Shown here: positions 5,301-61,490 of the stretch, in pieces
Layout: the number at the start of each line of letters is the position of its first letter
Numbering within the stretch: the stretch's first letter is position 1
Origin: Octopus sinensis
Lineage: Eukaryota
Reading direction: 5' to 3'
DNA length: 64,000 nt
Assembly (NCBI RefSeq): GCF_006345805.1
Contig: NC_042998.1
Location: 56,606,001-56,670,000 of the forward strand
Notes under the pieces: generated by a model
Database searches by the model: none
Told to the model about the DNA's origin: nothing
What the model saw: the letters and a program-made list of their open reading frames with translations, nothing else
Position numbers and translations under genes: made by a program

Positions 5301-7120
5301 TAGAAAGGTAGACAATCCACAAATATCTTCAGGAAGATGGCCCTGCTCGATCTGTAGAAAAGGTGTAGGTAGAAACTCTATAAGATGTACCCAGTGTAAG
5401 CTATGGACACATAAGAGGTGCAGCAATGTCAAAGGTAGGCTAACTGGGAAGATAGTTTTTGTATGTGGCAGATGCTCGGGAGCATTAACCTCCGAAAATC
5501 TGCAGAAAACAACTTCCGTCACTTTCCAGGGGGAAAAACTAGAAGTAGTTGATAGCTTCCGTTATCTAGGTGACCAAGTCAGTAGTGGGGGTGGGTGCGC
5601 TGAAAGTGTAACTGCTAGAATAAGAATAGCCTGGGCAAAGTTTAGGGAGCTCTTACCTCTGCTGGTGACTAAAGGCCTCTCGCTCAGAGTAAAAGGCAGA
5701 CTGTATGATGCGTGTGTACGAACAGCCATGCTACATGGCAGCGAAACATGGGCTGTGACTGCTGAGGACATGCGTAAGCTCGTGAGGAATGAAGCCAGTA
5801 TGCTCCGATGGATGTGTAATGTCAGTGTACATACTCGACAGAGCGTTAGCACCTTGAGAGAAATGTTGTACCTAAGAAGCATCAGTTGTGGTGTGCAAGA
5901 GAGACGATTGCGCTGGTATGGTCATATGGCGAGAATGGATGAAGATAGGTGTGTGAGAAAGTGCCAATCCCTAGCAGTTGAGGGAACCCGTGGAAGAGGT
6001 AGACCCAGGAAAACCTGGGACGAGGTGGTGAAGCACGACCTTCGAACTTTAGGCCTCACTGAGGAAATGACCAGAGACCGAGACCTTTGGAAATATTCTG
6101 TACGTGAGAAGACCAGGCAGGACAAGTGAGCCCAGCCCACTTATGAATGCCTTTCCTCCCTTGGACACAAAGACCGGTTGAGGCAAGCGAAGTCGATATA
6201 GAACCTCATCCGACGACAGACACCCATCCCAACCCCCCATGCTTGCGAAGACATGTTGGGGCAAGCGAAATTGAAACCGAATTGAACCAGCCAGGATCCC
6301 TGGCCTGGTGGTACGTAAAAAGCACTATCCGACTCGGGGCCGTGGCACGTAAAATACTCCAATGCGACCGTACGACAGGCACCCATGCCAACCCCCTTTG
6401 CTTGTGAAGACATGTTGGGGCAAGCGAAATCGAAATCGAATTGAACCAGCCAGGATCCCTGGTCTGGTGGTACGTAAAAAGCACTATCCGACTCGTGGCC
6501 GTGGCACGTAAAATACTCCAATGCGACCGTACGACAGGCACCCTTGCCAACCCCCTTTGCTTGTGAAGACATGTTGGGGCAAGCGAAATCGAAATCGAAT
6601 TGAACCAGCCAGGATCCCTGGTCTGGTGGTACGTAAAAAGCACTATCCGACTCGTGGCCGATGCCAGCACCGCCTCGACTGGCTTCCGTGCCGGTGGCAC
6701 ATAAAATACACCAATCTGACCGTGGCCGTTGCCAGCCCCGCCTGGCACCTGTGCAGGTGGCACGTAAAAAGCACCCACTACACTCACGGAGTGGTTGGCG
6801 TTAGGAAGGGCATCCAGCTGTAGAAACATTGCCAAATTAGACTGGAGCCTGGTGCAGCCTTCTGGCTTCCCAGAACCCCGGTCGAACCGTCCAACCCATG
6901 CTAGCATGGAGAACGGACGTTAAACGACGATGATGATGATGATGATATATAAATAAAATTAATCCAAACATGAAAACGCAAAGAGAAAACACAACAACGC
7001 GAGGAGGTGGAACAAGTATAGTGTTATTGGATGCTCAGGAAAGGAGGGTTTAACGTTTCGAGCGGAGCTCTTCGTCAGAAACATAGGAAAAGGAAAAATC
7101 CAAAGAAGGGAAGACGGAGG

Positions 7121-17700: not shown

Positions 17701-20700
17701 TAACACGCTGGGACACACTACACTATTTTTAGATGCCAGGTTAACATGTTTTGAAGAAATTATCAATTAGAGAGATAGAAATATACTTACAACAGTTTTA
17801 TCACAGTTTAACAGCTCCCAGTCATCATCATCACAGATAAATCCTACAAAATAAATGAAACAAATTATTCATCTTCACTCATTTTTCATGCAAACTTAAA
17901 TTAGATGAATATATTACTGAGACACTAGGTTAATGATGACCTTGATACTTTCCAAGTAAGGGATCTCTTATTCCACACATTTGTTTGTCTTTCTTTTTAG
18001 TCTATTTAAATGTGTACACACACACACAATGATGAACAGGAACAAAATGTTTGAGTTGAAGCAGAGAAAACCTAATTCAGACCCTTTCAAATCTACATTC
18101 GAGTGGTTGAGTTGCTCTCTCAGTACCCACTCATAATGCTGAAGTAGCTGTGAGCATGGTATCCTTTTTTTTTTTTTTTCTGGTTCTGAATGAACTCAGA
18201 ATCTATCCAACTATTCACCTGCACAGTGTTGCCATCTTACTCATGTATTATAGATTCCCAGGTCATGCACCAACTGACTGAGCTTGAACTACCCTTGGTC
18301 CTGTGTACTCAGTGTTGCCTGTTTGTGGGTTGATAGTGAAGTGGTTGAAACTTCTCAGTATTGACCTGCATGTTATTTTCATCAGCTCATCCTGCAGTTT
18401 TAGCACGAAGTGCATTCAAAAAGTATCCAACTATTTTTTTCCCTGCCAAAACTAATGTAGTGTGGATAAACTACTTCGGGTGGAACATAATGCCACCCTT
18501 CCTGCACATGTGTGAAAATTTTCATGTCTGTAGGACTGTCAGCTCCTGACTGTTATGCATTGTAATTGAATGCATTAAGCAGAAATACTGCAAGTTTTGC
18601 CAAAAGCTGTGATAACTTAAGCTCAAACCATTCAGAAGATTCAGCAGGCCTTTGGCAATGATGCCATGGGCAAAACTCAGATCAAGGAGTGGTACAACCA
18701 CTTCAAACATAACTGCATTTCAGTGGGGAGAAAGGCATGCTCAGGTAGGCCATCCACAAGCAGAAATGAAGAGCTGATTGAGGTTTGGCAAATCACACTG
18801 AAAGGGAAGCAATTTGAGTTGCAAGAGAAAACTGTGAGAAAAGCAACAATGGAACTCCACAGTATTCCAGGTGTTACCAGCAATGGCAGAACTGCTGGGA
18901 GAAGTGTGTGAACTCCTAAAAGGAATATTTTGAGGGTGATTAAATAAAATTTGTGAAGTGTACAAAATTGCTTTTTTTTAATGCACCTCATGTTATCAGG
19001 GTCCTTGACCACCTGTGATACTTTTGTAACATCAGCATAGCTGGTGAGTGGCTGACTTTATGTCAGAGAGTCACCACAAACACTAGTGGTGGTCTCAATA
19101 CAGTTCTTTGAGCGACTTCACAGAGAGAGAGAGCACCGTTAGCTGCAACTGTCTGACTTCTGCTTTTAAAAAAGTCATGCAGCCACTCTCCTAGTTTTCC
19201 AGCAATACCATGGTCATGCAGTTTGTGACAGATCATCCCATGAGCAACTTTAAGGTCTTAGCAAAGTTAACATATATCATTATCTACATTTGAGTGATTG
19301 AGCTGCTCTCTCAGTATCCAATCATAATGCTGTAGTAGCTGTGAGGCAGTTGTGTTGTGCATTTGCTAGCGAGTTATTTTCTTCCAGGAACGTGATCAGC
19401 CTCCTCTGGACAATGCATTCCATGACCTTGTTAAAATGTAAAGTCAGAGAGATGGGCCTAGCATCTGCTCTGCTTCCTTCTTTAAGGACAGGGCACATTA
19501 TACAATCTTCTAACAACTTGGGAAGTTTACCACATGCAAGGAAACTCTGAAAAAGTATTTGCAGTGGTTTTGTGACAGCTTTCTTGCATGTCTTTAAAAG
19601 AGCAGCTGGAAACCCATCTGGACCAGTTGTTGAGTTCATCTCACCAATGGCCAATATTACATCTTTCTCTCTCTTATGCCAATGTAATTGATGATTGCCT
19701 CTTTTCCCCCGTCGATCTGCAGTGTCGAAAAACTCATCAGGCTTGCTTATTAGCATGTTTCCCAGTGGAGAGGCGAAGAGACTTTGGCATTGCTTATTTG
19801 GCAGTTCACTTATCCTCCTGGGGTCTGAATTTAGAGAGCTGTCTAAACAATAGCACTGAGGCAGATTCTTTTGCAAAATTGTAGGATTTAGGATTCATTT
19901 TTACATTTTTCATTGCTTTGGTTTCTCTTTCTACACCTTAGTGCCTCTCTGAGGAGGGATTTCTTGCTGTTATTGCTGGGGAACAATGTTTTTGTATGCA
20001 GTTGTTCGCTTCTTTGGGACAAATTTAATGCGTATGGCTTGCAATAGATATAAAACTAAACATTTGATAGAAAAGTAAAGACAATATATGTGGACACTTT
20101 TTGAAATTGAGTAAGTTATGGACACTACACAGTTAACTCATAAGGGTACCATACTTAGTTAACTTTCCCAGAAAATATGGTTGGAGTGAAATAAATGTGA
20201 GTAGTTGAATATTCAACTTTGACCCTCTCAAAGCATATCATTATGTATGAAATTAGTTGGTCAACAATGGGGTGAGTGTATGTTTTCATTTTAAATTGGA
20301 CTTGGATTTTTTTGAATTCTTTCATATTTATAATAGTAACTGTATTTGCTTAAGAATCACTTTTTCAATCCTCAACTAACACTTAAAATACCTTGATGGT
20401 ATAAAATATATATGCATACATATAGATGTGTGTATGTATAATATATATATATGTATGTGGATGGGTGGATAGATGTGTGCATGTGTATATATTTACAAAC
20501 GTTAATATGTATGAGAAAAATGTTTTAAAAAATACAAGGGCTAAATTAAAGTCAACAACTTGAATAGTAATTAGACTTCAACAGGCTGACCACAGATACA
20601 ACTGAAAAGAAGCCCCCTTTCTTTGTCTTTCTTCTCTCTTTCTTTATCCATCTTTCTTACATAATAAAGGTGAAATTTTATCCGCCCATCTGGAACTCCT

Positions 20701-23700
20701 GTATTTCAGTCTGCATTTGCTCTAGACATAGACACCTTTTTGGAATCAGAATGATCTTGGGATTGAAAATCGCCTTTTATTTGGTTTGCTGTTTCTTGCA
20801 GGTAAAGCTCATCTAATTCACACCATCATGGTTGGCATTTGTCAAATGATGTCAGAGTTCATTCAAGGTGGAGATAATGACACTTGCTTCATTAATTTTA
20901 CATCAAGATAAGAATTTTGGGACAAATTGGCCAACAATTGGAATCCAAATTGGGACTGGAATGATTGCATTACAAAATTAATTCTCATCCATCCTTCTCC
21001 TCTGATCAAACACCACCAGGGCATATAGTCATGCTAATTAGAACTCTCTAGTTTTGGGCCACAGGCCCAGTTAGCCCCCCCCCCCACAGGAGCTAGCTTA
21101 AAAGCTAGTTCTCTATAAAAAAAAAACAATTAGCATCTGGAAAAAACTACAAACAACCACCAAATATAACAATGAAAGCCATCTCACAGATGAAAACGAG
21201 AAAAAGAATCCCATTCTCTCTTTCTTTCCTCCTTTTCTGTAAACACACATACAACTAATAAAACAAAGCATCTTCTTCCAGATTTGTATAAAAGGCAAAG
21301 AAATGTTCTGTAAAGCTGATATCTGAGGAATCTCCAAGAATGAGACAAAATTATCCAAAATTCTGACTGCCTCTTTTTACTTTATACATATATATAAAAT
21401 CAAAACTTCAAAACTAAAATAACAGTTAAGACGAACTAAAATAAGTTAATTTAAACTATTGCTTGAGTGATTTGTGTTTTCATCATTCCACAACATTTAT
21501 TGTTTTATGTCCATTTTTTTCCATATTATATAGATACAAAACTCATTTGATTACTAAGACACAAGACTATAAAATACTGTTGGTTACACTGGATCATAGT
21601 GGTCACTTTGAGTGAATCTCATACAGCATAACAAGCTTTTAAGGGAAGTATGTCTGCAATCAACTAACCAACATCTAAATCAGTGGTAAAAAAGAAAAAC
21701 AAAACTAATAAAACAAAGAGGATAAATACTTTTCTCAGTTGGTCTAAAAGAGATATTTGCTGACATTCAATAGTCAAATCAGAGATAATAGGGTCACAGC
21801 TGTCAAAAGACTGCAACAAATGTGGTGGCAGATAATTTCAAACATCCTCAGATGTGGCGTTAGAATTCTGTTGTTCAATCTTCATTGCTTTGAGATCTGC
21901 AATGTTCCCAGCAACATCTGAAGTATCTCGCCCTTCACACCTGGTGAGTTAAGGATCTGCTTCTTACATTGGAAAGGATGTCTCCTGAAGGACTTCTTTC
22001 TCTTGTTGAGCTGATGAGTTGGGGATCGGCTCAACAAGAGGTTCCTCACAAGACTGATCCTTTCGAATGTAAGAAGCAGGTCTCTAACTCACCAGCCCTA
22101 CAAGAGAAAGAGGTTCTTCATGAGACTGATCCTTTCCAATGTAAGAAACAGATGCCCAACTCACCAGCCTCAAAAGAGAAAGACATCTTTCACAAGAATG
22201 ATCCTTTCCAATATAAGAAGCAGATCCCTAACTCACCAGCTCAACAACAAAAAGGTCTTTGACAAAACTGATCCTTTCCATTGTAAGAAACAGATCCTAA
22301 CTCACCTGTTCAACAAGGAAAAGAGATTCTTCATGAGACTGATCCTTTCCAATGTAAAAAGCAGATCCCTAAATCACCAGCTCAACAAAAGAAAAAGATC
22401 CTTCACAAGACTTATCCTTTCCAATATAAGAAGCAGATCATTAACTTACCATTTGTTTTTTCTTCGAATTGAATATTTGGTTCCTGTTCATCATAGTTTG
22501 CGGTTTCAGCACTATCACTGGGTTCTGCGCCTTTTAGAATTGTAGAAATGTCATCCTCACATATATGGGTGTCATTTACAGCTGTAACAAGATCAGTAAT
22601 TTCATTTAACTCTTTTCTGTTGGGTTTTTCATTAATATTCTGTCTGGATTGAGAACCCGCATGCTTCCCGTTTCCTACTTGCTGTTGTTTGTTAGGTGAA
22701 GTAGGAGTGATGTCTATTTGAATATCATTTTCAACAGCTACTGCAGCAACTGGAGAATTAGCCATTTGAGTTCTGCCCTCAAATGAGATATCAATATTAC
22801 TTTGACTCCCTTGAATTGATTTGGGAGAATTTAGTAGATGAGTGTTAGTACTGAAGGTGTCAACATCTTTAAAGACTGAAGGATTTGAAATTATTTCAAA
22901 TTTTTGCAGATTATCATCACTTGCTGCAATAGAATTAGGAATTTCACAGTTAATTTTGGAATGGTCACTAGCATCTTTAACTTCAGAAGATTCCATGACC
23001 TCTTCTTCAATATCATTAGGTCTTCCAATATCTACAACAGGCTTCTTGATTTCTACATTTTCAGCAACTGAAGCATTATCTATTGCTTTCGATAGGGGAG
23101 CATTTTCATGAGTGTTTTCTTCAGCTAATTGAGGTTTAGGATATCCATGGCTACAGTCAACATTCTGAGACTCAAGCAGATTTGAATTTTTCTCTTCAGT
23201 CTTCTCTGCATCAACATTTGCTGTGCCAATCTTAGAACTACATTCAAAATGTTCTACATTATCAGACGATTTCTCTTCAGGAATTTTCTCTTTTGTAGTT
23301 AGACAGTTAGCAATTCCAGTTTCAAAAGAATCAACAAACTTTTTAGCTCCTGAAATCTTTTCTTCAGTCTGTACTGTCATCAAAGTAGTTTCACTAGCTG
23401 ACATGTGTTTGTCAGTCTTTGTTGAGCCAGTAGCAACAGACTCATGTATCTGGTTGCTAATTTCAGAAGAGCCAACAGAACTAGAATCAGGGGTTCTATC
23501 TTTTGATTTATCTTCATCATTAAAATAATCAAAGTTCTCCGGGATTGAAATTTCAGCAATCCTTTCTTCAACTTTGCAAGTATCCAAAATATCAGTGTTT
23601 TGCTTTTCATCAACTGGAGGCTGAGCCATGGTCAAAGGATCAGAACTATCGTTTGGCATTTCCACAGACTGGATGACATTAACTGATGACTGTGGAACTG

Positions 23701-26700
23701 GTTTATCATCAACTGGTCTTCCAATATCTGAAACAGGTTTCTTGATTTCTACATTCTCAGCAACTGAAGCATTATCTATTGCTTTCGATAGCTGAGCATT
23801 TCTACTGGTGTTTTCTTCAGTTGATTGAGGTTTTGGACTTTCATGGCTACAGTCAACATTCTGAGACTCAAGCAGATTTGAATTATTCTCTGCATCAACA
23901 TTTGCAGTGCCAATCTTAGAACTACATTCAAAATGTTCTACATTATCGGACGATTTCTCTTTTGAAGTAAGACAGTTAGCAATTCCAGTTTCAAGAGAAT
24001 CAACAGTCTCTTTAGCTCCTGAAATCTTTTCTTCAGTCTGTACTGTCATCAAAGTAGTTTCACTATCTAACATATTTTTGTCAGTCTTTGTTGAGCCAGT
24101 AGCAACAGACTCATTTATCTGGTTGCTAATTTCAGGAGGGGCAACAAAATCAGAATCAGGGGTTCTATCTTTTGATTTATCTTGATCATTAAAATTATCA
24201 AAGGTCTCAGGAACTGAAATTTCAGCAATCTTTTCTTCAACTTTACAAGTATCCAAAATATCCGTGTTTTGCTTTTCATCAACTGGAAGTTGTATGCTAT
24301 TACTTTCCATGGTCAAAGGATAAGAACTATCATTTGGGGTTTCCACAGACTGGATGACATTAACTGATAAATGTAGAAATGGTTTCTCATCAACTGGTCT
24401 TCCAATATCTGCAACAGGCTTCTTGATTTCTACATTCTCAGCAACTGAAGCATTATCTATTGCTTTCGATAGGTGAGCATTTACACTGGTGTTTTCTTCA
24501 GTTGATTGAGGTTTAGGATTTCCATGGCTACAGTCAGTATTCTGAGACTCAAGCAGATTTGAATTATCCTCTTCATTCTTCTCTGCATCAACATTTGCAG
24601 TGCCAATCTTAGAACTACATTCAAAATGTTCTACATTATCAGACGATTTCTCTTTTGAAGTTAGACAGTTAGCAATTTCAGTTTCAAGAGAATCAACAGT
24701 CTCTTTAGCTCCTGAAATCTTTTCTTCAGTCTGTACTGTCATCAAAGTAGTTTCACTACCTGACATATTTTTGTCAGTCTTTGTTGAGCCAGCAGCAACA
24801 GACTCATTTATCTGGTTGCTAATTTCAGAAGTATCAACAGAACTAGAATCAGGGGTTCTATCTTTTGACTTGTCTTCAGCATTAAAATTATCAAATTTCT
24901 CAGGAACTGAAATTTCAGCAATCTTTTCTTTAACATGGCAAACATCCAAAATATCCGTGTTTTGCTTTTCATCAACTGGAGGTTGAAGAATATAACTTTC
25001 ATTGGTCGAAGTATCAGAACTATCATTTGCCGTTTCCACAGACTGGATGACATTAACTGATGAATGTAGAACTGGTTGCTCATCAACTGGTCTTCCAATA
25101 TCTGCAACTGGTTTGTTGATTTCTACATTCTCAGCAACTGAAGCATTATCTATTGCTTTCGATAGCTGAGCATTTTCACGAGTGTTTTCTTCAGTTGATT
25201 GAGGTTTAGGACTTTCATGGCTACACTCAACATTCTGAGACTCAAGCAGATTTGAATTATTCTCTGCATCAACATTTGCAGTGTCAATCTTAGAACTACA
25301 TTCAAAATGTTCTACATTATCAGACGATTTCTCTTTTGGAGTTAGACAGTTAGCAATTCCAGTTTCAAGAGAATCAACAGTCTCTTTAGCTCCTGAAATC
25401 TTTTCTTCAGTCTGTACTGTCATCAAAGTAGTTTCACTATCTAACATATTTTTGTTAGTCTTTGTTGAGCCAGTAGCAACAGACTCATTTATCTGGTTGC
25501 TAATTTCAGGAGGGGCAACAGAGCCAGAATCAGGGCTTCTATCTTTTGATTTATCTTGATCATTAAAATGATCAAAGTTCTCCGGGATTGAAATTTCAGC
25601 AATCTTTTCTTCAACTTTGTAAGTATCCAAAATATCTGTGTTTTGCTTTTTATCAACTGGAGGCTGATCCATGGTCAGAGAATCAGAACTATCATTTGGC
25701 GTTTCCACAGACTGGATGACATTAACTGATGACTGTGGAACTGGTTTCTCATCAACTGGTCTTCCAATATCTGCAACAGGCTTCTTGATTTCTACATTCT
25801 CAGCAACTGAAGCATTATCTATTGCTTTCGATAGCTGAGCATTTCCACTGGTGTTTTCTTCAGTTGATTGAGGTTTAGGGCTTTCATGGCTACACTCAAC
25901 ATTCTGAGACTCAAGCAGATTTGAATTATTCTCTTCAGTCTTCTCTGCATCAACATTTGCAGTGCCAATCTTAGAACTACATTCAAAATGTTCTACATTA
26001 TCAGACGATTTCTCTTTTGGAGTTAGACAGTTAGTAATTCCAGTTTCAAGAGAATCAACAGTCTCTTTAGCTCCTGAAATCTTTTCTTCAGTCTGTACTG
26101 TCATCAAAGTAGTTTCACTATCTAACATATTTTTGTCAGTCTTTGTTGAGCCAGTAGCAACAGACTCATTTATCTGGTTGCTAATTTCAGGAGGGGCAAC
26201 AAAATCAGAATCAGGGGTTCTATCTTTTGATTTATCTTCATCATTAAAATAATCAAAGTTCTCCGGGATTGAAATTTCAGCAATCCTTTCTTGAACTTTG
26301 CATGTATCCAAAATATCTGTGTTTTGCTTTTTATCAACTGGAGGCTGATCCATGGTCAAAGGATCAGAACTATCGTTTGGCATTTCCACAGACTGGATGG
26401 CATTAACTGATGACTGTGGAACTGGTTTCTCATCAACTGGTCTTCCAATATCTGCAACAGGCTTCTTGATTTCTACATTCTCAGCAACTGAAGCATTATC
26501 TATTGCTTTCGATAGCTGAGCATTTCCACTGGTGTTTTCTTCAGTTGATTGAGGTTTAGGACTTTCATGGCTACACTCAACATTCTGAGACTCAAGCAGA
26601 TTTGAATTATTCTCTTCAGTCTTCTCTGCATCAACATTTGCAGCATCAATTTTAGGACTACATTCAAAATGTTCTACATTATCAGATGATTTCTCTTCAG

Positions 26701-28536
26701 GAATTTTCTCTTTTAAAGTTAGACAGTTAGCAATTTCACTTTCAAGAGAATCAACAGTCTCTTTAGCTCCTGAAATCTTTTCTTCAGTCTGTACTGTCAT
26801 CAAAGTAGTTTCACTATCTGACATATTTTTGTCAGTCTTTGTTGAGCCAGTAGCAACAGACTCATTTATCTGGTTGCTAATTTCAGAAGTATTAACAGAA
26901 CTAGAATCAGGGGTTCTATCTTTTGATTTGTCTTCAGCATTAAAATGATCAAATTTCTCAGGAATTGAAATTTCGGCAATCTTTTCTTCGACTTTGCAAA
27001 CATCCAAAATATCCGTGTTTTGCTTTTCATCAAGTGGAGGTTGAAGAATATAACTTTCATTGGTTGAAGCATTAGAACTATCGTTTGCAGTTTCCACAGA
27101 CTTGATGACATTAACTGATTTCTCATCAATTGGTATGCTGTCAGAATTTTGATCTATAATCTTCAAGTAATCCCCATTTTCAACGTCAGTGGAATTAGTT
27201 AACTTTGCATCTTTAGGTAAATTAGTGAAATCTTCAGCATGATGTTCAGCCACTGTTTCTGGTTCTATACAAATGACTTGAGAAGATGGATTTTTATTTT
27301 CATGAGATTCTGAAAGATTGCCAATATTTTGATTATGGATTGCCTCGTTGAATAAATCAGAATTAATTTCAGGTTCTATATACTCCAATTTCTCGTGGAT
27401 ATTTTTATCGGAAATCTTTTCTGGTAAAGATGCTTCCTGTGTCTCATCAATCCCAATAATAGCACTTTCTGAATCTCTTTCACCAGAGTTATTGTTCTTC
27501 ATAAGAGTTCCAGCAACATTCAGTGAAGTTCTTGGTGACGACTCTAGAGATTTAAAAGCATCATTATCACTTGTATTATCAATGTTTAGATCTTCATTTT
27601 TGAAATACTCTGAAGCATCAGTGAAAAATTCATCATCATCTGTAATGACCAATGTCTTGCGGGGTACATTGTCAGGTTCAATTTCTTCAGGGTCGCTCAG
27701 ATAATCTTTTTCAACGAGTTTATCCACACCAGCAAAAGGTTCAGAGAAAGGAAGTTTTACCTTTTTAGGCTGTGCCTGGGTATCCCTAGTACTTTGCTGC
27801 ATTCCATCAGGCATGAGCAGTGCTAATGCAGACATCTGCTTGCAGAGCTCAAAAATAGTCTTTCCTGGTGTTTCTTTAGTGCTTTCAGGAAAGTTCCCAT
27901 TAGGGTTTATATTTTCATTATTAACAGCTTTTGTAGGCCGTGGAGTAGTGTTATAGTGCCAACTTTTATTTTGTTCTTTTTCTGGCTTAGATACACCAAG
28001 AGACGGAACTTTAAAGTTGTCATTCCTGAAAATAAATGAAAAGAAAGCACATATAAGGTAAGGTTAAAAAAAAAAAGGTGCAATATATAATTAGTGTACA
28101 GTACAGTTCTGACCCTTCCAAGAAAATGTTCTGCTTTGGAAGGCAAAGTTTTGTATGAAGATGAGCCAGAATGAATGGTAAAACAAAAAAAAAAAAGAGA
28201 CTCAGAATCACAAACTACAAATCTGTGCTTATTAGAATGCCATAGGATTAGTACAAACGTACAATTAAAGAAATGCCCTTTTTTTTTTTTTACCCCAAAG
28301 AGATAGTTTCAAACACCAGCCAAATCAATTTTCTTTCAATCTCCAGAAATTGTAAGTACCAGCATTACATTGGCTCAAGTCCTTTGACTAATTAAAACAA
28401 CGACTTATTAAAATGACATTACCACTATGGCAAATGCAGTTTAAATTTGCTGAAGAATTTAATTGCTAATCAATTACACTTACCTGTTTGAAGTCTTCAA
28501 GATGCCCAATGGCTTATTGGTAGGTATGTCACTCAT
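2138..28536 (-). CDS. TACC: TACC-family (transforming acidic coiled-coil, TACC3/D-TACC-like) protein; spliced CDS of 12 exons, 3' end not found in window
   Basis: Twelve exons join with GT/AG sites and matching phases (total 6,569 nt). The product contains RESLYVKFDPLL (cf. TACC3 SLYLKFDPLL), VLKYTEEDW at the start of the coiled coil, ELQTVQKAYSDLHRRFEKAKTIIESLKK|NEEMLK (cf. TACC3 [34 protein letters not shown]) and a long acidic N-terminus. Confidence 0.93.
2370..2462 (-). CDS. TACC: TACC-domain exon (IQDELQTVQKAYSDLHRRFEKAKTIIESLKK)
   Basis: Acceptor tctttcag|ATC and donor AAG|GTCAGT; strong match to the TACC domain core. Confidence 0.93.
3290..3546 (+). mobile_element. Short 3' fragment of the same RTE family with (GAT)n tail
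   Basis: Near-identical to about 6660-6945. Confidence 0.9.
3649..6948 (+). mobile_element. 5'-truncated RTE-clade LINE with an uninterrupted ORF (C-terminal APE, RT, PHD-like finger), 3' UTR and (GAT)n tail; antisense in a TACC intron
   Basis: Frame is open from 3649 (CNTNFRK...QIDYIL...QHRLVV) through the 735-aa ORF to 6129. RT motifs KAPGPSG, YRGIKLL, QFGF, FVDMEKAFDRV, GVHQGSVLSP, LYADDL and YLG are present. 5' end abuts (TA)n; ends in (GAT)n. Confidence 0.97.
6225..6662 (+). repeat. 159-bp tandem repeat (~2.7 units) inside the RTE 3' UTR
   Basis: GGGGCAAGCGAAAT recurs at 6258, 6417 and 6576. Confidence 0.93.
6955..7200 (-). mobile_element. Penelope-like element terminal-repeat remnant carrying a minimal hammerhead
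   Basis: Contains the motif at 7048-7082; a related degenerate copy is at about 53915-54085. The PLE origin is inferred from the hammerhead type. Confidence 0.55.
7048..7082 (-). ncRNA. Minimal type I hammerhead ribozyme motif (PLE-type)
   Basis: GTTT-CTGACGA-A-GAGC(TCC)GCTC-GAAA-CG-T-T-AAAC: 4-bp stem I, 4-bp stem II and a palindromic ACGT in place of stem III. Confidence 0.7.
7288..7355 (-). CDS. TACC: TACC exon (AEKQKRADDYTKGIDGSKKEVDL)
   Basis: Acceptor aattccag|CT and donor CTT|GTGAGT; 68 bp, phase 1 to 0. Confidence 0.85.
7405..8150 (+). mobile_element. Degenerate RTE LINE RT fragment
   Basis: YRGVKLLEHAMK, QFGFMPG, FVDLEKAFDRV, GVHQGSVL and CADDL motifs, broken by a stop and frameshifts. 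Confidence 0.92.
8200..8630 (+). mobile_element. tRNA-derived SINE, family A (CORE-like ccttgggcaagt, internal (TA)n(TG)n)
   Basis: A-box-like gtggctgtgtggtaag and B-box-like gggttcagtccc; many copies in the window; internal ~42-bp duplication at about 8390-8472. Confidence 0.88.
8702..8745 (-). CDS. TACC: TACC exon (KKVLDEYTVLMDHLA)
   Basis: Acceptor tttctccag|G and donor CTG|GTATGT; 44 bp. Supplies exactly the phase 2 to 1 change needed between its neighbours. Confidence 0.85.
9500..9810 (+). mobile_element. RTE-family 3' UTR fragment
   Basis: Matches about 6640-6940, with repeated ggcacgtaaaaagcac motifs. Confidence 0.88.
10023..10255 (-). CDS. TACC: TACC exon, start of coiled coil (VLKYTEEDWLKMKQ...LNEM)
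   Basis: Acceptor ccaatag|GTA and donor AA|GTAAGT; heptad-rich; 233 bp, phase 0 to 2. Confidence 0.88.
11323..11742 (+). mobile_element. SINE family A
   Basis: Full-length match to the 8200-8630 copy. Confidence 0.88.
11850..12047. repeat. Near-perfect palindrome (~96-bp arms, 6-nt loop at 11947-11952) made of two inverted hammerhead-containing termini
   Basis: The arms 11850-11946 and 11953-12047 are reverse complements with few mismatches; flanked by (TA)n. Confidence 0.93.
11951..12013 (+). ncRNA. Type I hammerhead-like motif
   Basis: AGATAA-CTGAAGA-GATGGCG...CGGCATC-T-GAAA-CTCAGAG-T-T-TTATCT: 6-bp stem I, long stem II, short stem III, and one extra nucleotide before GAAA. Confidence 0.55.
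12277..12336 (-). CDS. TACC: TACC exon (ADAIFFGTPLPQKKNSEIVQ)
   Basis: Acceptor acttttag|GCC and donor CAG|GTGAGA; 60 bp, phase 0 to 0. Confidence 0.8.
13055..13199 (-). CDS. TACC: TACC exon (SPPKSPDLIMMDSPTRKSMYQKVNPL...NNN)
   Basis: Acceptor aattccag|T and donor AAT|GTGAGA; 145 bp, phase 2 to 0. Confidence 0.82.
14436..14484 (-). CDS. TACC: TACC exon (NKRKSVSKQPALEKIK)
   Basis: Acceptor ttgttttag|AC and donor GAG|GTAAGA; 49 bp, phase 1 to 2. Confidence 0.8.
15294..15381 (-). CDS. TACC: TACC exon with RESLYVKFDPLL motif
   Basis: Acceptor cttccag|ATA and donor GA|GTAAGT; encodes INASRLCRESLYVKFDPLLGLNNTIDFDM. Confidence 0.92.
15775..16135 (-). mobile_element. Old SINE family A copy with CpG decay
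   Basis: Colinear with family A; CG sites are largely converted to TG/CA. Confidence 0.75.
16470..17200. mobile_element. Two older RTE 3' UTR fragments in opposite orientation (about 16470-16660 +, 16885-17200 -) flanking a SINE head (about 16735-16885 -)
   Basis: Both resemble 6770-6945 with CpG decay; (GAT)n and (CAT)n tails face each other. Confidence 0.75.
17791..17843 (-). CDS. TACC: TACC exon (GFICDDDDWELLNCDKTV)
   Basis: Acceptor attttgtag|GA and donor GTT|GTAAGT; phase 1 in and 0 out, fitting both neighbours. Confidence 0.8.
18404..18992 (+). mobile_element. Internally deleted mariner element
   Basis: HTH remnant MGKTQIKEWYNHFK...SGRPSTS; degenerate TIRs cacgaagtgcattcaaaaag and ctttttttaatgcacctcatg. 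Confidence 0.8.
19180..19880 (-). mobile_element. Degenerate CR1/L2-type LINE RT fragment (related piece at about 18085-18360)
   Basis: TGPDGFPAALLK...KPLQILFQ...PVLKEGSRADARPISLT..NKVMECIV. 18095-18155 duplicates 19286-19345. Confidence 0.75.
21941..22027 (-). repeat. Inverted copy (~1.2 units) of the 72-bp minisatellite, fold-back junction at about 22011-22027
   Basis: The reverse complement reads gatccccaactcatcagctcaacaagagaaagaagtccttcaggagac-atcctttccaatgtaagaagcagatccttaactcaccag, matching the array unit. Confidence 0.93.
22028..22450 (+). repeat. 72-bp minisatellite (~5.8 units) adjoining the giant-exon donor
   Basis: GATCCTTTC anchors at 22056, 22128, 22200, 22270, 22341 and (as TATCCTTTC) 22413; unit spacings 72, 72, 70, 71, 72. 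Confidence 0.95.
22450..28025 (-). CDS. TACC: TACC giant exon (5,576 bp): acidic, low-complexity region with six long tandem repeats
   Basis: Acceptor ttttcag|G at 28025. The frame is open from 28024 and continuous with the 1807-aa ORF. Donor ATG|GTAAGT at 22450/22449, phase 1. Confidence 0.9.
23019..27118 (-). repeat. Six tandem coding repeats of 669-708 bp in the TACC giant exon
   Basis: Unit starts (SVNxIxSVE) at 27118, 26410, 25729, 25060, 24367 and 23686; units are visibly highly similar at DNA level. Confidence 0.97.
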
Positions 28537-57701: not shown

Positions 57702-58124
57702 GGATCTTTTCGGTTTGAACAGCAGTTTTTTCTAGTGGTGTCATATAAAATTGTCACCCATAATTATGACCCTAGTATCGATCTATTGCATTTCAATCTG
57801 TTTTAGGGTTAGGGTTAGAGTTAGGGTTAGGGGGAAGGGTATCTTTTTTCTTCAGAAATGTAAATAAACCCAATCTGTTTCTTAAACGAGGGACATATTC
57901 ATACGGCACAGAATGTTTTTTTTACCTCAATGGACGTCATTGATTGGTTGAAATTGCAAAAATTGAAAAAAAAACAACAAATATCTTACAGATTATAGAA
58001 TTTTCTCAATAAAGCCAAGAGAAAAAGATGTTTTATAAACACATTCTACCAGTATACGAAGTTTAAAAGTGTTTACTTACGTGGAAATTATTTAGAAAAA
58101 CTGCCGATCAAACAGAAAAGATCC
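57702..58124 (+). mobile_element. MITE with ~24-bp TIRs (GGATC...GATCC), 8-bp TSD TAAATTTC and internal TTAGGG repeats; Merlin-like by inference
   Basis: ggatcttttcggtttgaacagcag / ctgccgatcaaacagaaaagatcc; TSD at 57694-57701 and 58125-58132. Confidence 0.88.
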
Positions 58125-60812: not shown

Positions 60813-61325
60813 GGTGGCGAGCTGGCAGACTCGTTAGCACGCTGGACGAAATGCTTAGCGGTATTTCGTCTGCGTTACGTTGTGAGTTCAAATTCCGCCG
60901 AGGTCGACTTTGCCTTTCATCGTGACTTACACCACGACTTTGCCTAATAAAGAAATAGGTATTTCGTCTGCCGCTACGTTCTGAGTTCAAATTCCGCCGA
61001 GGTCGACTTTGCCTTTCATCCTTTCGGGGTCGATAAATTAAGTACCAGTTACGCACTGGGGTCGATGTAATCGACTTAATCTCTTTGTCTGTCCTTGTTT
61101 GTCCCCTCTATGTTTAGCCCCTTGTGGGTCATAAAGAAATAGGTATTTCGTCTGCCGTTACGTTCTGAGTTCAAATTCCGCCGAGGTCGACTTTGCCTTT
61201 CATGCTTTCGGGGTCGATTAAATAAGTACCAGTTACGCACTGGGATCGATATAATCGACTTAATCCGTTTGTCTGTCCTTGTTTGTCCTCTCTGTGTGTA
61301 GTCCCTTGTGGGCAGTAATAGAAAT
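60813..61325 (+). mobile_element. tRNA-derived SINE family B, tandem trimer
   Basis: Head ggtggcgagctggcag with B-box gagttcaaattcc; the body gcctttcatcctttcggggtcgat repeats after taataaagaaatagg tails at about 60957 and 61141. Confidence 0.85.
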
Positions 61326-61490
61326 AAGTATTACGACTGTCGGATCTTTTCTTTTTGAAGGCCAGATTTTCCTAGTTAACTAAAAAATTTGAAACTCCGT
61401 ATACTGGTAGAATGTGTCAAAAGAAAACATTATTGTAAACAAAATTGAAAACAAAATTTGGTAGAGGGAAGCTGTGTGGAATCCCATCAC

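What the first reader, a model, noticed from the sequence alone, without database searches (positions are those of the whole stretch)
21941..22450. Ladder of consensus 5' splice sites plus a fold-back arm directly behind the 5.6-kb giant exon
Seen: the 72-bp array runs right up to the giant-exon donor, and that donor (AACTTACC, 22443-22450) is a variant of the unit motif AACTCACC. On the transcribed strand the other units read G|GTGAGTT at 22306 (a full CAG|GTGAGT), 22237, 22165 and 22093, and G|GTGATTT at 22378. Spacings are 72, 72, 69, 72, 72, so all are in the same phase. Every unit also puts a stop in the TACC frame, so use of a distal donor gives a premature stop. A single inverted ~85-nt copy (21941-22027) follows immediately and could pair with any one unit, including the one with the real donor. 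Known: multi-kb exons are hard to define, U1 binding suppresses premature polyadenylation, and one-docking/many-selector pairing controls splice choice in Dscam1. Inference: this could be a U1 decoy/enhancer array or an RNA-structure switch coupling giant-exon splicing to NMD; it could also be neutral debris.
Basis: partly seen in the sequence, partly recalled or inferred. Interest (0 to 1): 0.78.

Follow-up and report, generated by a model that had tools for sequence, protein, structure and literature searches.

The report
Inverted TACC repeats mimic splice donors
The "ladder of splice donors plus fold-back arm" behind the octopus TACC giant exon is the gene's own ancestral 24-residue protein repeat flipped onto the wrong strand, where the antisense of its Asn-Ser-Pro codons happens to spell a 5' splice site; it is most likely a by-product of that inversion, not a designed splicing switch.

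Summary
A 72-bp array (5.7-5.9 units) starts at the giant-exon donor. Pseudo-donors sit at 22378, 22306, 22237, 22165 and 22093, all in phase, with stops in every unit, and an inverted 95-nt copy lies at 21937-22031. The gene is the Octopus sinensis TACC homologue on the minus strand.

The plus strand of the array encodes DPFQCKKQIPNSPAQQEKEILHET. This is the DPF-x2-K-x-Q-x2-NSP repeat of molluscan TACC3-like proteins (E down to 9e-51), which in those proteins lies just upstream of the LYVKFDPL/Aurora-A-binding region. The array sits at that same point in the gene, but antisense. Only the "arm" keeps the sense orientation, and it is frameshifted.

GGTGAGTT is the reverse complement of AAC-TCA-CC (Asn-Ser-Pro). 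The donor in use, G|GTAAGT, is the antisense of an N-L-P unit at the inversion breakpoint. An independent O. vulgaris assembly has identical breakpoints and arm but 13.7 units and 14 donor-like sites, so the inversion is real and the array varies in copy number. The arm's predicted pairing partner changes with copy number. Argonauta has no array.

The closest precedent for the ladder is the human F7 intron-7 minisatellite. A regulatory role is not excluded, but nothing requires one.

The parts
22450..28027 (-). Giant exon (about 5.58 kb) of the octopus TACC homologue. It contains six ~690-bp internal repeats. The last exon base is G at 22450.
   Evidence: Open frame 28063->22415. Mapping of P0002 and P0001. 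Internal repeats at ~90% identity. TACC_C domain in the encoded protein.
22745..22864 (-). Two degenerate repeat units that are still coding, in sense, inside the giant exon: VDTFSTNTHLLNSP and ISFEGRTQMANSP (residues 1311 and 1335 of P0002).
   Evidence: Weak profile hit at 22783-22745, iE 0.17. Motif scan, and blastp alignments to mollusc TACCs that begin at residues ~1306-1310. Weak hit in the annotated proteins.
22444..22452 (-). Donor in use, ATG|GTAAGT. It is the antisense of AAC-TTA-CCA (Asn-Leu-Pro, a variant NSP) in the unit at the exon-proximal inversion breakpoint.
   Evidence: Junction EEKTN|GFICDDDD in three gene models from two species. Unit alignment.
22029..22450 (+). Inverted block of 5.9 units of the TACC DPF-x2-K-x-Q-x2-NSP repeat (24 codons = 72 bp). 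Its coding sense is on the plus strand, antisense to the gene. One unit (22239-22307) carries indels that leave it 69 nt long and frameshifted.
   Evidence: phmmer hits to 29 protein clusters, E down to 8.8e-51. These are mollusc TACC3-like proteins. A mollusc-only profile hits 22053-22370 on the plus strand. TRF.
22093..22378 (-). Five pseudo-donors. The last exon-like G is at 22378 (GTGATT), 22306 (CAG|GTGAGT), 22237, 22165 and 22093 (CTG|GTGAGT). Each is the antisense of AAC/AAA-TCA-CCA-G.
22012..22028 (.). 17-nt junction/loop (TGATGAGTTGGGGATCG on the plus strand; IPNSS in gene sense) between the inverted block and the sense arm. It lies between the 12-nt palindromic arms 22000-22011 and 22029-22040 and marks the distal breakpoint region.
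   Evidence: Inverted repeat I11. Sequence. Identical in O. vulgaris.
21937..22031 (-). The 'fold-back arm': 1.3 repeat units left in the original sense orientation (IPNSS-AQQEKEVLQET-[2-nt deletion]-PFQCKKQILNSP-G). It no longer has an open frame.
   Evidence: Profile hit at 21977-21933 on the minus strand, iE 1.1e-5. Duplex energies of -50 to -98 kcal/mol net with the different units.
21935..21943 (-). CAG|GTGTGA at the end of the arm (last G at 21941). It is in the same phase (1) as the donor in use and is the candidate ancestral donor of the once-longer giant exon. This is inferred.
   Evidence: 7/9 site. Phase worked out. Present in O. vulgaris at L003 19394.
17791..17843 (-). Next exon (G)FICDDDDWELLNCDKTV. 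It begins the region homologous to the Aurora-A-binding/LYVKFDPL segment that follows the repeats in mollusc TACCs.

Best explanation
The array is the TACC family's own central repeat domain (24-residue units with the core D-P-F-x-x-K-x-Q-x-x-N-S-P). In the ancestor it formed the 3' end of the giant exon. A small intragenic inversion of about 422 bp (window 22029-22450) turned roughly six units onto the opposite strand and left 1.3 units (the 'arm') in sense.

In these units Asn-Ser-Pro-Ala is encoded AAC-TCA-CCA-G. The antisense of that is C-TG|GTGAGTT, a consensus 5' splice site, so it recurs every 24 codons and always in the same phase. The first such site, at the breakpoint, is G|GTAAGT, from an N-L-P variant. 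It is in the phase the downstream exon needs, and it now ends the exon. Everything downstream became intron, and the protein lost these repeats.

The remaining sites are pseudo-donors that would each give a premature stop. The fold-back is just sense units lying next to antisense units. Since the inversion the block has evolved as a non-coding, copy-number-variable minisatellite.

Shown: homology, strand, position, breakpoints shared by two assemblies, copy-number difference, and gene-model junctions.
Inferred: that the event was a simple inversion of a multi-unit coding array; that the ancestral donor was CAG|GTGTGA at 21941; that the pseudo-donors are largely silent because the most upstream site wins, as in human F7 intron 7; and that the structure has no selected function.
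For: (1) The plus-strand translation of 22029-22259 hits 29 protein clusters, with E down to 8.8e-51 and 5-17 repeat stretches in nearly all of them. Six of the eight tested have Pfam TACC_C and three have Aurora-A_bind_TACC3. The named ones are TACC3-like proteins of Babylonia, Mizuhopecten, Pinctada, Biomphalaria, Haliotis, Tegillarca, Dreissena and Sinanodonta.
(2) A profile built from 261 mollusc repeat cores, with no octopus sequence, was run over all six frames of the window. Its only hits below iE 0.01 are on the plus strand at 22053-22370 (iE 2.8e-9, 1.9e-6, 3.4e-4, 8.2e-4) and on the minus strand in the arm (iE 1.1e-5).
(3) Position is collinear. In the mollusc orthologues the repeats end 100-200 residues before LYVKFDPL. 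In octopus the array lies in the intron between residue 1448 and the exon that leads to LYVKFDPL at 1477, and two degenerate sense repeats survive at residues 1311 and 1335.
(4) The two best-conserved blocks of the unit are GGTGAGTT and GGAAAGGAT, the antisense of N-S-P and D-P-F. The donor window is matched or beaten by 15 of 64 windows. The core varies less than the linker, 18/271 against 37/219 cells, p = 4.7e-4.
(5) Un-inverting 22029-22450 in silico puts the repeats in frame with the giant exon.
(6) Non-coding decay is visible: a 69-nt frameshifted unit, a 2-nt deletion in the arm, and D>Y, N>K and S>L changes in the motif.
(7) The O. vulgaris assembly (L003) has an identical exon end, unit 1, junction and arm but 13.7 units. 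The frameshifted unit has itself been amplified as part of a 141-bp dimer.
(8) All three gene models use the first donor.
(9) Human F7 intron 7 shows that such ladders exist and that the upstream-most site is the one chosen (PMC1557585).
Against: - No species with the array in sense orientation was available. The inversion is therefore inferred from strand, position and homology, and was not observed.
- The distal junction is not a clean cut-and-flip. A 17-nt partial unit sits between the blocks, and the arm is out of frame after simple un-inversion. The event may have been more complex.
- The in-frame result at the proximal junction has a 1-in-3 prior and depends on where the breakpoint is placed.
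- O. sinensis and O. vulgaris are 99.5-100% identical here, so they say nothing about constraint.
- The units keep the protein motif surprisingly well. That implies either a recent event or some continuing constraint.
- Four pseudo-donors match U1 better than the donor in use. In F7, perfect-consensus pseudo-sites did capture some splicing, so some leakage to NMD isoforms is likely and could be functional.
- No RNA data were examined.
Confidence: 0.8

Rival explanations
1. Functional splicing module. The pseudo-donor ladder recruits U1 snRNP to help define or protect the 5.6-kb exon (enhancer, decoy or telescripting). Alternatively, the arm pairs with one unit at a time, so that donor choice, and hence NMD, is regulated.
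For: Four sites match the U1 consensus at 8/9 or better within 220 nt, out of 15 in the whole 64 kb, and they are stronger than the donor in use. Every distal donor gives a premature stop. The region folds far better than shuffles (z = -8.65), and in O. sinensis the MFE and centroid pair the arm with the unit holding the real donor. In the F7 system, perfect-consensus pseudo-sites do capture some splicing.
Against: All of these features follow automatically from an inverted coding repeat. The donor motif is not preferentially conserved. Copy number differs, 6 against 14, between near-identical genomes. The arm's predicted partner is not maintained: the real donor pairs with it at P = 0.55 in O. 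sinensis and P = 0.01 in O. vulgaris. The arm is transcribed 420-980 nt after the real donor, so U1 can bind the donor first. Argonauta also has a giant exon in this gene but no array.
Confidence: 0.08
2. Same coding ancestry but a different event. A fold-back (template-switch) inverted duplication copied one or a few sense units. The antisense copies were then amplified as a minisatellite, and the ancestral exon never held about seven units.
For: The junction looks like a hairpin: 12-nt palindromic arms with a 17-nt loop. The antisense block is demonstrably still amplifying, by 141-bp dimers in O. vulgaris. Simple un-inversion leaves the arm out of frame.
Against: The O. sinensis units differ by about 20%, and the differences are concentrated in the linker and in the family's variable positions rather than spread evenly. 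That pattern is expected if the units diverged while coding. Mollusc orthologues carry 6-20 units, so a multi-unit ancestor is the default. This rival changes the history, not the nature, of the feature.
Confidence: 0.1
3. Assembly artefact: a misoriented segment or a palindromic long-read chimera in the O. sinensis assembly.
For: Inverted junctions are a known artefact class. The array's length differs between the two assemblies.
Against: The same orientation, breakpoints, 17-nt junction and 2-nt arm deletion occur in an independent assembly of another species, GCA_951406725.2. The arm is only 81-95% complementary to any unit, not an exact palindrome. The gene models of both species splice at the breakpoint donor.
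Confidence: 0.01
4. An antisense (plus-strand) gene or exon is still translated from the array.
For: Two plus-strand frames are largely open across the array, including a 141-aa ORF at 22120-22545.
Against: The repeat frame is broken by indels in one unit, and in O. vulgaris that broken unit has been amplified five-fold. No annotated or predicted protein shares even three 5-residue words with the units. No gene with that ORF as its product is on record. On the plus strand the array is flanked by the antisense of the giant exon. Codon-position variability shows no clear periodicity, 27/15/27.
Confidence: 0.01

Closest known systems
Human F7 (coagulation factor VII) intron-7 37-bp VNTR minisatellite (Borensztajn et al. 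2006, PMC1557585)
   Same: A tandem array whose first unit carries the exon-intron junction, so the authentic donor is followed by a periodic ladder of pseudo-5' splice sites. Copy number is polymorphic. Normally only the most upstream site is used, and pseudo-sites that match U1 better do not compete unless they are perfect consensus.
   Different: The F7 units are identical in sequence and no coding origin is described for them. Here the units are 72 nt, about 80% alike, and derive from the gene's own protein repeat in antisense. An inverted copy adds a long fold-back, and most pseudo-sites are stronger than the site in use. Usage has not been measured in octopus.
Central DPF-x2-K-x-Q-x2-NSP repeats of molluscan TACC3-like proteins (e.g. 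Mizuhopecten XP_021341217.1, Haliotis XP_048237426.1, Babylonia XP_076434557.1)
   Same: The same 13-residue core with identical spacing, tandem arrangement, and position upstream of the Aurora-A-binding/LYVKFDPL region and the TACC_C coiled coil of the same gene family.
   Different: In octopus the units lie antisense to the gene (or, in the arm, sense but frameshifted). They are intronic and absent from the protein. The octopus protein keeps only two degenerate copies.
Dscam1 docking-site/selector-sequence competing RNA structures
   Same: One sequence (the arm) is complementary to each of several tandem units, so the pairings are mutually exclusive.
   Different: No alternative exons are attached to the units. 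Choosing any unit other than the first gives a premature stop. The partner preference is not conserved between two near-identical genomes and the structure is absent in Argonauta. The comparison to Dscam1 rests on my own knowledge of that system.
Intronic inverted repeats as long double-stranded RNA (ADAR substrates, back-splicing promoters)
   Same: A predicted duplex of about 95 bp at -50 to -98 kcal/mol net, within one intron.
   Different: Those are usually formed by inverted transposon copies. Here the repeat is a relic of the host gene's own coding sequence. Editing was not tested.

Membership tests
TACC-family DPF...NSP repeat domain | Sequence matches the repeat core D-P-F-x2-K-x-Q-x2-N-S-P in tandem units | tested here: met
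   phmmer E down to 8.8e-51 with 5-17 stretches per hit in nearly all. The mollusc-only profile gives iE 2.8e-9 to 8e-4 on four units and 1.1e-5 on the arm.
TACC-family DPF...NSP repeat domain | Lies within a TACC gene, upstream of the LYVKFDPL/Aurora-A-binding segment and the TACC_C domain | tested here: met
   The gene has TACC_C. The array lies between residue 1448 and the exon leading to LYVKFDPL at 1477, collinear with eight mollusc orthologues. Pfam PF25777 itself did not reach threshold on the octopus protein.
TACC-family DPF...NSP repeat domain | Encoded on the gene's sense strand in an open frame and present in the protein | tested here: not met
   5.9 units are antisense. The sense arm has a 2-nt deletion, and one unit is frameshifted. 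Gene models of two species splice the block out. It is therefore a relic, not a functional member.
Exon-boundary minisatellite with pseudo-donor ladder (human F7 IVS7 type) | Tandem repeat whose first unit carries the authentic exon-intron junction | tested here: met
   The array ends at 22451 and the last exon base is 22450.
Exon-boundary minisatellite with pseudo-donor ladder (human F7 IVS7 type) | Each further unit carries a donor-like site | tested here: met
   Five further sites score 7-9 of 9. There are 13 further sites in O. vulgaris.
Exon-boundary minisatellite with pseudo-donor ladder (human F7 IVS7 type) | Variable copy number | tested here: met
   5.7-5.9 units in O. sinensis against 13.7 in O. 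vulgaris, with 99.5-100% identical flanks. This compares two assemblies, not a population. Collapse of the array in one assembly cannot be excluded.
Exon-boundary minisatellite with pseudo-donor ladder (human F7 IVS7 type) | Only the most upstream donor is used physiologically | not testable with these tools
   Three gene models use the first donor, but no read-level data were available.
Dscam1-type docking/selector RNA switch | One docking sequence complementary to several selector sequences | tested here: met
   The arm pairs with each of the six units, at net -50 to -98 kcal/mol.
Dscam1-type docking/selector RNA switch | Each selector is attached to an alternative, productive exon choice | tested here: not met
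   There are no alternative exons, and every distal donor gives a stop in frame.
Dscam1-type docking/selector RNA switch | Architecture and pairings conserved across species | tested here: not met
   The predicted partner changes between O. sinensis and O. vulgaris. Argonauta has no array.
Recursive splice site (polypyrimidine tract + AG|GTRAGT) | Juxtaposed 3' and 5' splice-site consensus | tested here: inconclusive
   TCTCTTTTCCTTGTTGAACAG|GTGAGT at 22306 fits by eye, and there are five copies in O. vulgaris. It lies only 144 nt into a 4.6-kb intron. Usage is unknown.
Known structured RNA families (Rfam) | Match at the family's gathering score | tested here: not met
   There are only three sub-threshold snoRNA-like matches, 16-20 bits against gathering scores of 38-60.

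The most novel reading that the evidence does not exclude
The inverted block has been co-opted. The ladder of U1-binding pseudo-donors, stronger than the authentic donor, and the 95-nt fold-back together set what fraction of TACC pre-mRNA is spliced productively and what fraction goes to NMD. The fold-back would be a likely ADAR substrate in a heavily RNA-editing animal. Copy-number variation (6 against 14 units) would then act as a heritable control on TACC dosage.
Probability: 0.07. Interest if true: 0.7.

Novelty: new variant of a known kind. Interest (0 to 1): 0.45.

Why it matters
It replaces a speculative regulatory device with a concrete, checkable history. A micro-inversion of about 0.4 kb inside an exon removed a conserved repeat domain from an essential spindle protein. 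The gene survived because the antisense of the repeat's own Asn-Ser-Pro codons (AAC-TCA-CCA) is a consensus 5' splice site in the right phase.

This is a clean example of how coding sequence can be turned into intron in one step, and of how a periodic "signal" can be a shadow of codons on the other strand. That is a useful caution for motif-based genome scans.

It also offers a natural invertebrate counterpart to the human F7 intron-7 system. Two near-identical genomes carry 6 and 14 pseudo-donors, most of them stronger than the authentic one, which allows a test of whether upstream-first donor selection holds outside mammals.

Finally, it shows that Octopus TACC lacks the DPF...NSP repeats that its mollusc orthologues carry in 6-20 copies. 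That bears on what those repeats do.

Tried and rejected
- The unit occurs nowhere else in the window, either as DNA or as peptide (blastn and tblastn), so a dispersed element was not supported at that scale.
- Codon-position periodicity of the inter-unit differences was 27/15/27, which is not significant. On that basis I first judged a coding origin unsupported. The exhaustive protein search overturned that.
- A word-indexed search with the conserved C-terminal 373 residues returned only two distant Logan TACC proteins and no cephalopods. The same tool found nothing with the octopus repeat peptide.
- A metagenome scan with the unit core found no matches.
- An Rfam scan of 20500-23500 found nothing near threshold.
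- P0001 (O. vulgaris) was not on record as a gene product. The locus was reached through the longer isoform, P0041.
- The look-up of the 141-aa plus-strand ORF found nothing.
- Spearman correlation between mollusc per-position entropy and octopus inter-unit variability was not significant (rho 0.34, p = 0.25). It is also partly circular, because the mollusc units were selected by the motif.
- A literature search for inversion-created splice donors found nothing pertinent. A search for names of TACC repeats was not informative.
- L002 turned out to be the window's own assembly, so it gave no independent evidence.
Full report
**1. Observation.**
- Tandem Repeats Finder reports a 72-bp array at 22046-22451: 5.7 copies, 79% matches, score 502.
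- The repeat finder gives the six units in register, plus an inverted copy at 21937-22031 that is 81-95% complementary to the individual units.
- On the minus strand the donor-like sites are ATG|GTAAGT (last exon base 22450), CTG|GTGATT (22378), CAG|GTGAGT (22306) and CTG|GTGAGT (22237, 22165, 22093). Spacings are 72, 72, 69, 72, 72.
- On that strand of the whole 64-kb window only 15 GT sites match CAG|GTRAGT at 8 of 9 or better. Four of them are here, and the site actually used scores 7 of 9.
- Read-through in the exon frame stops after 12 codons (...EEKTNGKLMICFLYWKG*), and every unit carries a stop in that frame.

**2. Gene context.**
- The window is 100% identical to Octopus sinensis chromosome CM016860.1.
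- The minus strand carries a TACC-family gene. A reading frame is open from 28063 to 22415.
- The frame matches O. sinensis XP_036356626.1, two O. vulgaris models and an Argonauta hians protein. Pfam TACC_C was confirmed on the O. sinensis and Argonauta proteins and is on record for the longer O. vulgaris isoform.
- Mapping the models onto the window gives the junction ...EEKTN|GFICDDDDWELL.... The donor is at 22450 and the acceptor TTTTGTAG|GATTTATC is at 17843, followed by nine further exons down to about 2140.

**3. What the array is.**
The plus strand reads through most of the array as a 24-residue repeat, NSPAQQEKEILHETDPFQCKKQIP. The arm gives the same peptide on the minus strand.

I first tested this by codon-position variability and found no clear signal, 27/15/27. 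An exhaustive HMMER search of 1.84 billion representative proteins with 77 residues of the plus-strand translation then returned 29 clusters, with E-values down to 8.8e-51. Nearly all match in 5-17 separate stretches.
- Six of the eight best have Pfam TACC_C, and three have the TACC3 Aurora-A-binding region.
- The named ones are TACC3-like proteins of gastropods and bivalves: Babylonia, Mizuhopecten, Bulinus, Pinctada, Biomphalaria, Haliotis, Tegillarca, Dreissena and Sinanodonta.
- Their sequences show tandem DPFKPKAQLANSP-type units, including NPF(T/A)CKKQLANSP in Pinctada.

I then built a profile from 261 mollusc repeat cores, with no octopus sequence, and ran it over all six frames of the window and of the Argonauta locus.
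- Its only hits below iE 0.01 are on the plus strand at 22053-22370 (iE 2.8e-9, 1.9e-6, 3.4e-4, 8.2e-4) and on the minus strand at 21977-21933, the arm (iE 1.1e-5).
- It gives one weak sense hit inside the giant exon (22783-22745).
- It gives nothing in Argonauta.

**4. Position.**
- In eight mollusc orthologues the repeat block ends 100-200 residues upstream of the LYVKFDPL motif.
- In the octopus protein that motif is at residue 1477, and the intron holding the array interrupts the protein between residues 1448 and 1449.
- blastp alignments to the mollusc proteins begin at residues ~1306-1310. Two degenerate sense repeats survive there (VDTFSTNTHLLNSP at 1311, ISFEGRTQMANSP at 1335).
- The array is thus at the family's repeat position, in the right gene, but on the wrong strand.

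**5. Consequences for the "design" features.**
- In coding sense the core is GAT-CCT-TTC-CAA-TGT-AAG-AAG-CAG-ATC-CCT-AAC-TCA-CCA.
- The reverse complement of AAC-TCA-CCA-G is C-TG|GTGAGTT, a consensus donor. The reverse complement of GAT-CCT-TTC-C is GGAAAGGATC.
- These are the two best-conserved blocks of the unit. The donor window is matched or beaten by 15 of 64 eight-column windows, and GGAAAGGAT is the best of all.
- The 72-nt period and the constant phase follow from 24 codons per unit.
- The donor in use, G|GTAAGT, is the antisense of AAC-TTA-CC, a Ser-to-Leu variant in the unit that abuts the exon.
- The fold-back is 1.3 sense units lying next to antisense units.
- Taking the inverted segment as 22029-22450, un-inverting it in silico runs the giant-exon frame straight into the repeats...FEEKTN-AQQEVPHKTDPFECKKQVSNSP-ALQEKEVLHETDPFQCKKQMPNSP.... 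This has a one-in-three prior and depends on where the breakpoint is placed, so it is only compatible evidence.
- The arm ends CCA-G|GTGTGA at 21941, in phase 1. The present donor is also phase 1, and so is the Argonauta intron before its FICDD exon (GCACAAG|GTAATT ... TTTTGTAG|ACTTTATC). I infer that this was the ancestral donor of a giant exon about 510 nt longer.
- The distal junction is not clean. A 17-nt partial unit (IPNSS) lies between two 12-nt palindromic arms, and simple un-inversion leaves the arm out of frame. Staggered breaks or a template switch may therefore have been involved.

**6. Did a multi-unit array exist before the inversion?**
- Inter-unit differences are concentrated in the linker: 37 of 219 cells deviate from the majority, against 18 of 271 in the core (Fisher p = 4.7e-4). 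Within the core they fall mostly at the family's variable positions.
- That is what divergence under protein-level selection predicts. It is not what amplification of a single unit after the inversion predicts.
- The correlation with the mollusc per-position entropy is not significant and is partly circular.
- Decay since the event is mild: one unit shortened to 69 nt with two frameshifting indels, a 2-nt deletion in the arm, and D>Y, N>K and S>L changes in the motif.

**7. Independent assembly.**
Through the longer O. vulgaris isoform I obtained the O. vulgaris locus, GCA_951406725.2.
- It has the same exon end, unit 1, 17-nt junction, arm (with the same 2-nt deletion) and CAG|GTGTGA. These segments and the flanks are 99.5-100% identical to O. 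sinensis.
- This rules out an assembly artefact.
- The array is 13.7 units long. A 141-bp dimer (72 + 69 nt, including the frameshifted unit) is present about 6.8 times at 93% identity, giving 14 donor-like sites, five of them CAG|GTGAGT.
- The mollusc profile again hits the antisense strand across the array and the sense strand in the arm.
- The block is therefore evolving as a non-coding, copy-number-variable minisatellite.
- Both O. vulgaris models and the O. sinensis model splice at the first donor.
- Argonauta has a giant exon, with its own 11-residue repeats, but no array. It has an extra 65-codon exon ending ...KPDFKIAQ before FICDD.

**8. RNA structure.**
- The minus-strand RNA of 21900-22480 folds to -223.7 kcal/mol, against -164.6 +/- 6.8 for shuffles (z = -8.65). 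The MFE and centroid pair the arm with unit 1, which includes the real donor.
- Net duplex energies of the arm with the six registers are -98, -79, -81, -95, -82 and -50 kcal/mol.
- In the ensemble, the real donor pairs with the arm at P = 0.55 in O. sinensis but at P = 0.01 in the longer O. vulgaris allele, where the arm pairs with internal units.
- The potential for a long duplex is real, but sequestering of the real donor is not a maintained feature.
- The arm is also transcribed 420-980 nt after the donor.
- Such a duplex would be a plausible ADAR substrate. That is an inference and was not tested.

**9. How it most likely works now.**
- The first donor is recognised and the rest of the block is removed with the intron.
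- The closest experimental precedent is the 37-bp minisatellite in human F7 intron 7. Its first unit carries the exon-intron junction, and only the most upstream of five to nine donor sites is used. Pseudo-sites with higher U1 complementarity do not compete unless they are perfect consensus (PMC1557585).
- By analogy I expect little use of the octopus pseudo-donors, with some leakage at the CAG|GTGAGT sites into NMD-targeted transcripts.
- A selected role for the ladder or the fold-back is not excluded (about 0.07-0.08), but nothing in the data requires one.

**10. Novelty and score.**
- Pseudo-donor ladders from boundary minisatellites are known, and so are fold-backs from intronic inverted repeats.
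- What I did not find described is the origin. An intra-exonic micro-inversion of a conserved coding repeat supplied a working donor from the antisense codons of that repeat. The inversion thereby converted the repeat domain into intron and deleted it from the protein.
- I rate it a new variant of a known kind, with interest 0.45.

Noticed in passing
window 22900-27000 (minus strand; giant exon): The giant exon holds six tandem copies of a ~681-693-bp (~227-231 aa) unit at about 90% identity. TRF missed them because its longest period is 500. Copy number differs between models: the O. vulgaris proteins are 2183 and 2531 aa, while the O. sinensis RefSeq model (1821 aa) covers only 65% of the 1871-aa translation of the window's giant exon used as query, so it skips some repeats.
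   Followed up: partly
L001 10899-15857 (Argonauta hians TACC giant exon): Argonauta's giant exon is filled with about 80 copies of a different, 11-residue repeat (PTDNVPVVEAK). It lacks both the octopus 230-aa repeats and the DPF...NSP units, so the acidic middle of TACC is rebuilt with lineage-specific repeats in each octopod.
   Followed up: partly
L001 16757-16951: Argonauta has an extra 65-codon exon between its giant exon and the FICDD exon. It ends ...EKTPEAKPDFKIAQ, possibly a last degenerate DPF-type unit. Octopus has no intron at that point.
   Followed up: no
window 17770-17791 / P0001: The shorter O. vulgaris model (CAI9718418.1) reads through the donor after the FICDD exon and ends ...DKTVVSIFLSL*. 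This is either a retained-intron isoform or an annotation artefact.
   Followed up: no
window 22286-22312; L003 18445-18471 and four further copies: TCTCTTTTCCTTGTTGAACAG|GTGAGT joins a polypyrimidine tract and AG directly to a consensus donor, like a recursive splice site. It is the antisense of N-S-P-V-Q-Q-G-K-E. There is one copy in O. sinensis and five in O. vulgaris.
   Followed up: partly
window ~19150-19340 (minus strand) vs L001 22279-22451 and 350-547: A stretch of ~170-200 nt in the octopus intron matches two places in the Argonauta locus at 65-70% identity. It is probably an old dispersed repeat shared by octopods.
   Followed up: no
window 57803-57832: Five copies of TTAGGG, an interstitial telomere-like repeat.
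   Followed up: no
window 60947-61339 and 6213-6660: Two tandem duplications with long units: 184 bp x 2.1 at 91%, and 159 bp x 2.8 at 96%. The 184-bp unit looked tRNA-like by eye, but ARAGORN finds no tRNA in the window.
   Followed up: partly
The word-indexed protein search with the exact C-terminal 373 residues of P0002 did not return P0002 itself. The index may not cover the far C-terminal parts of long proteins, so negative results from that tool are weak.
   Followed up: no
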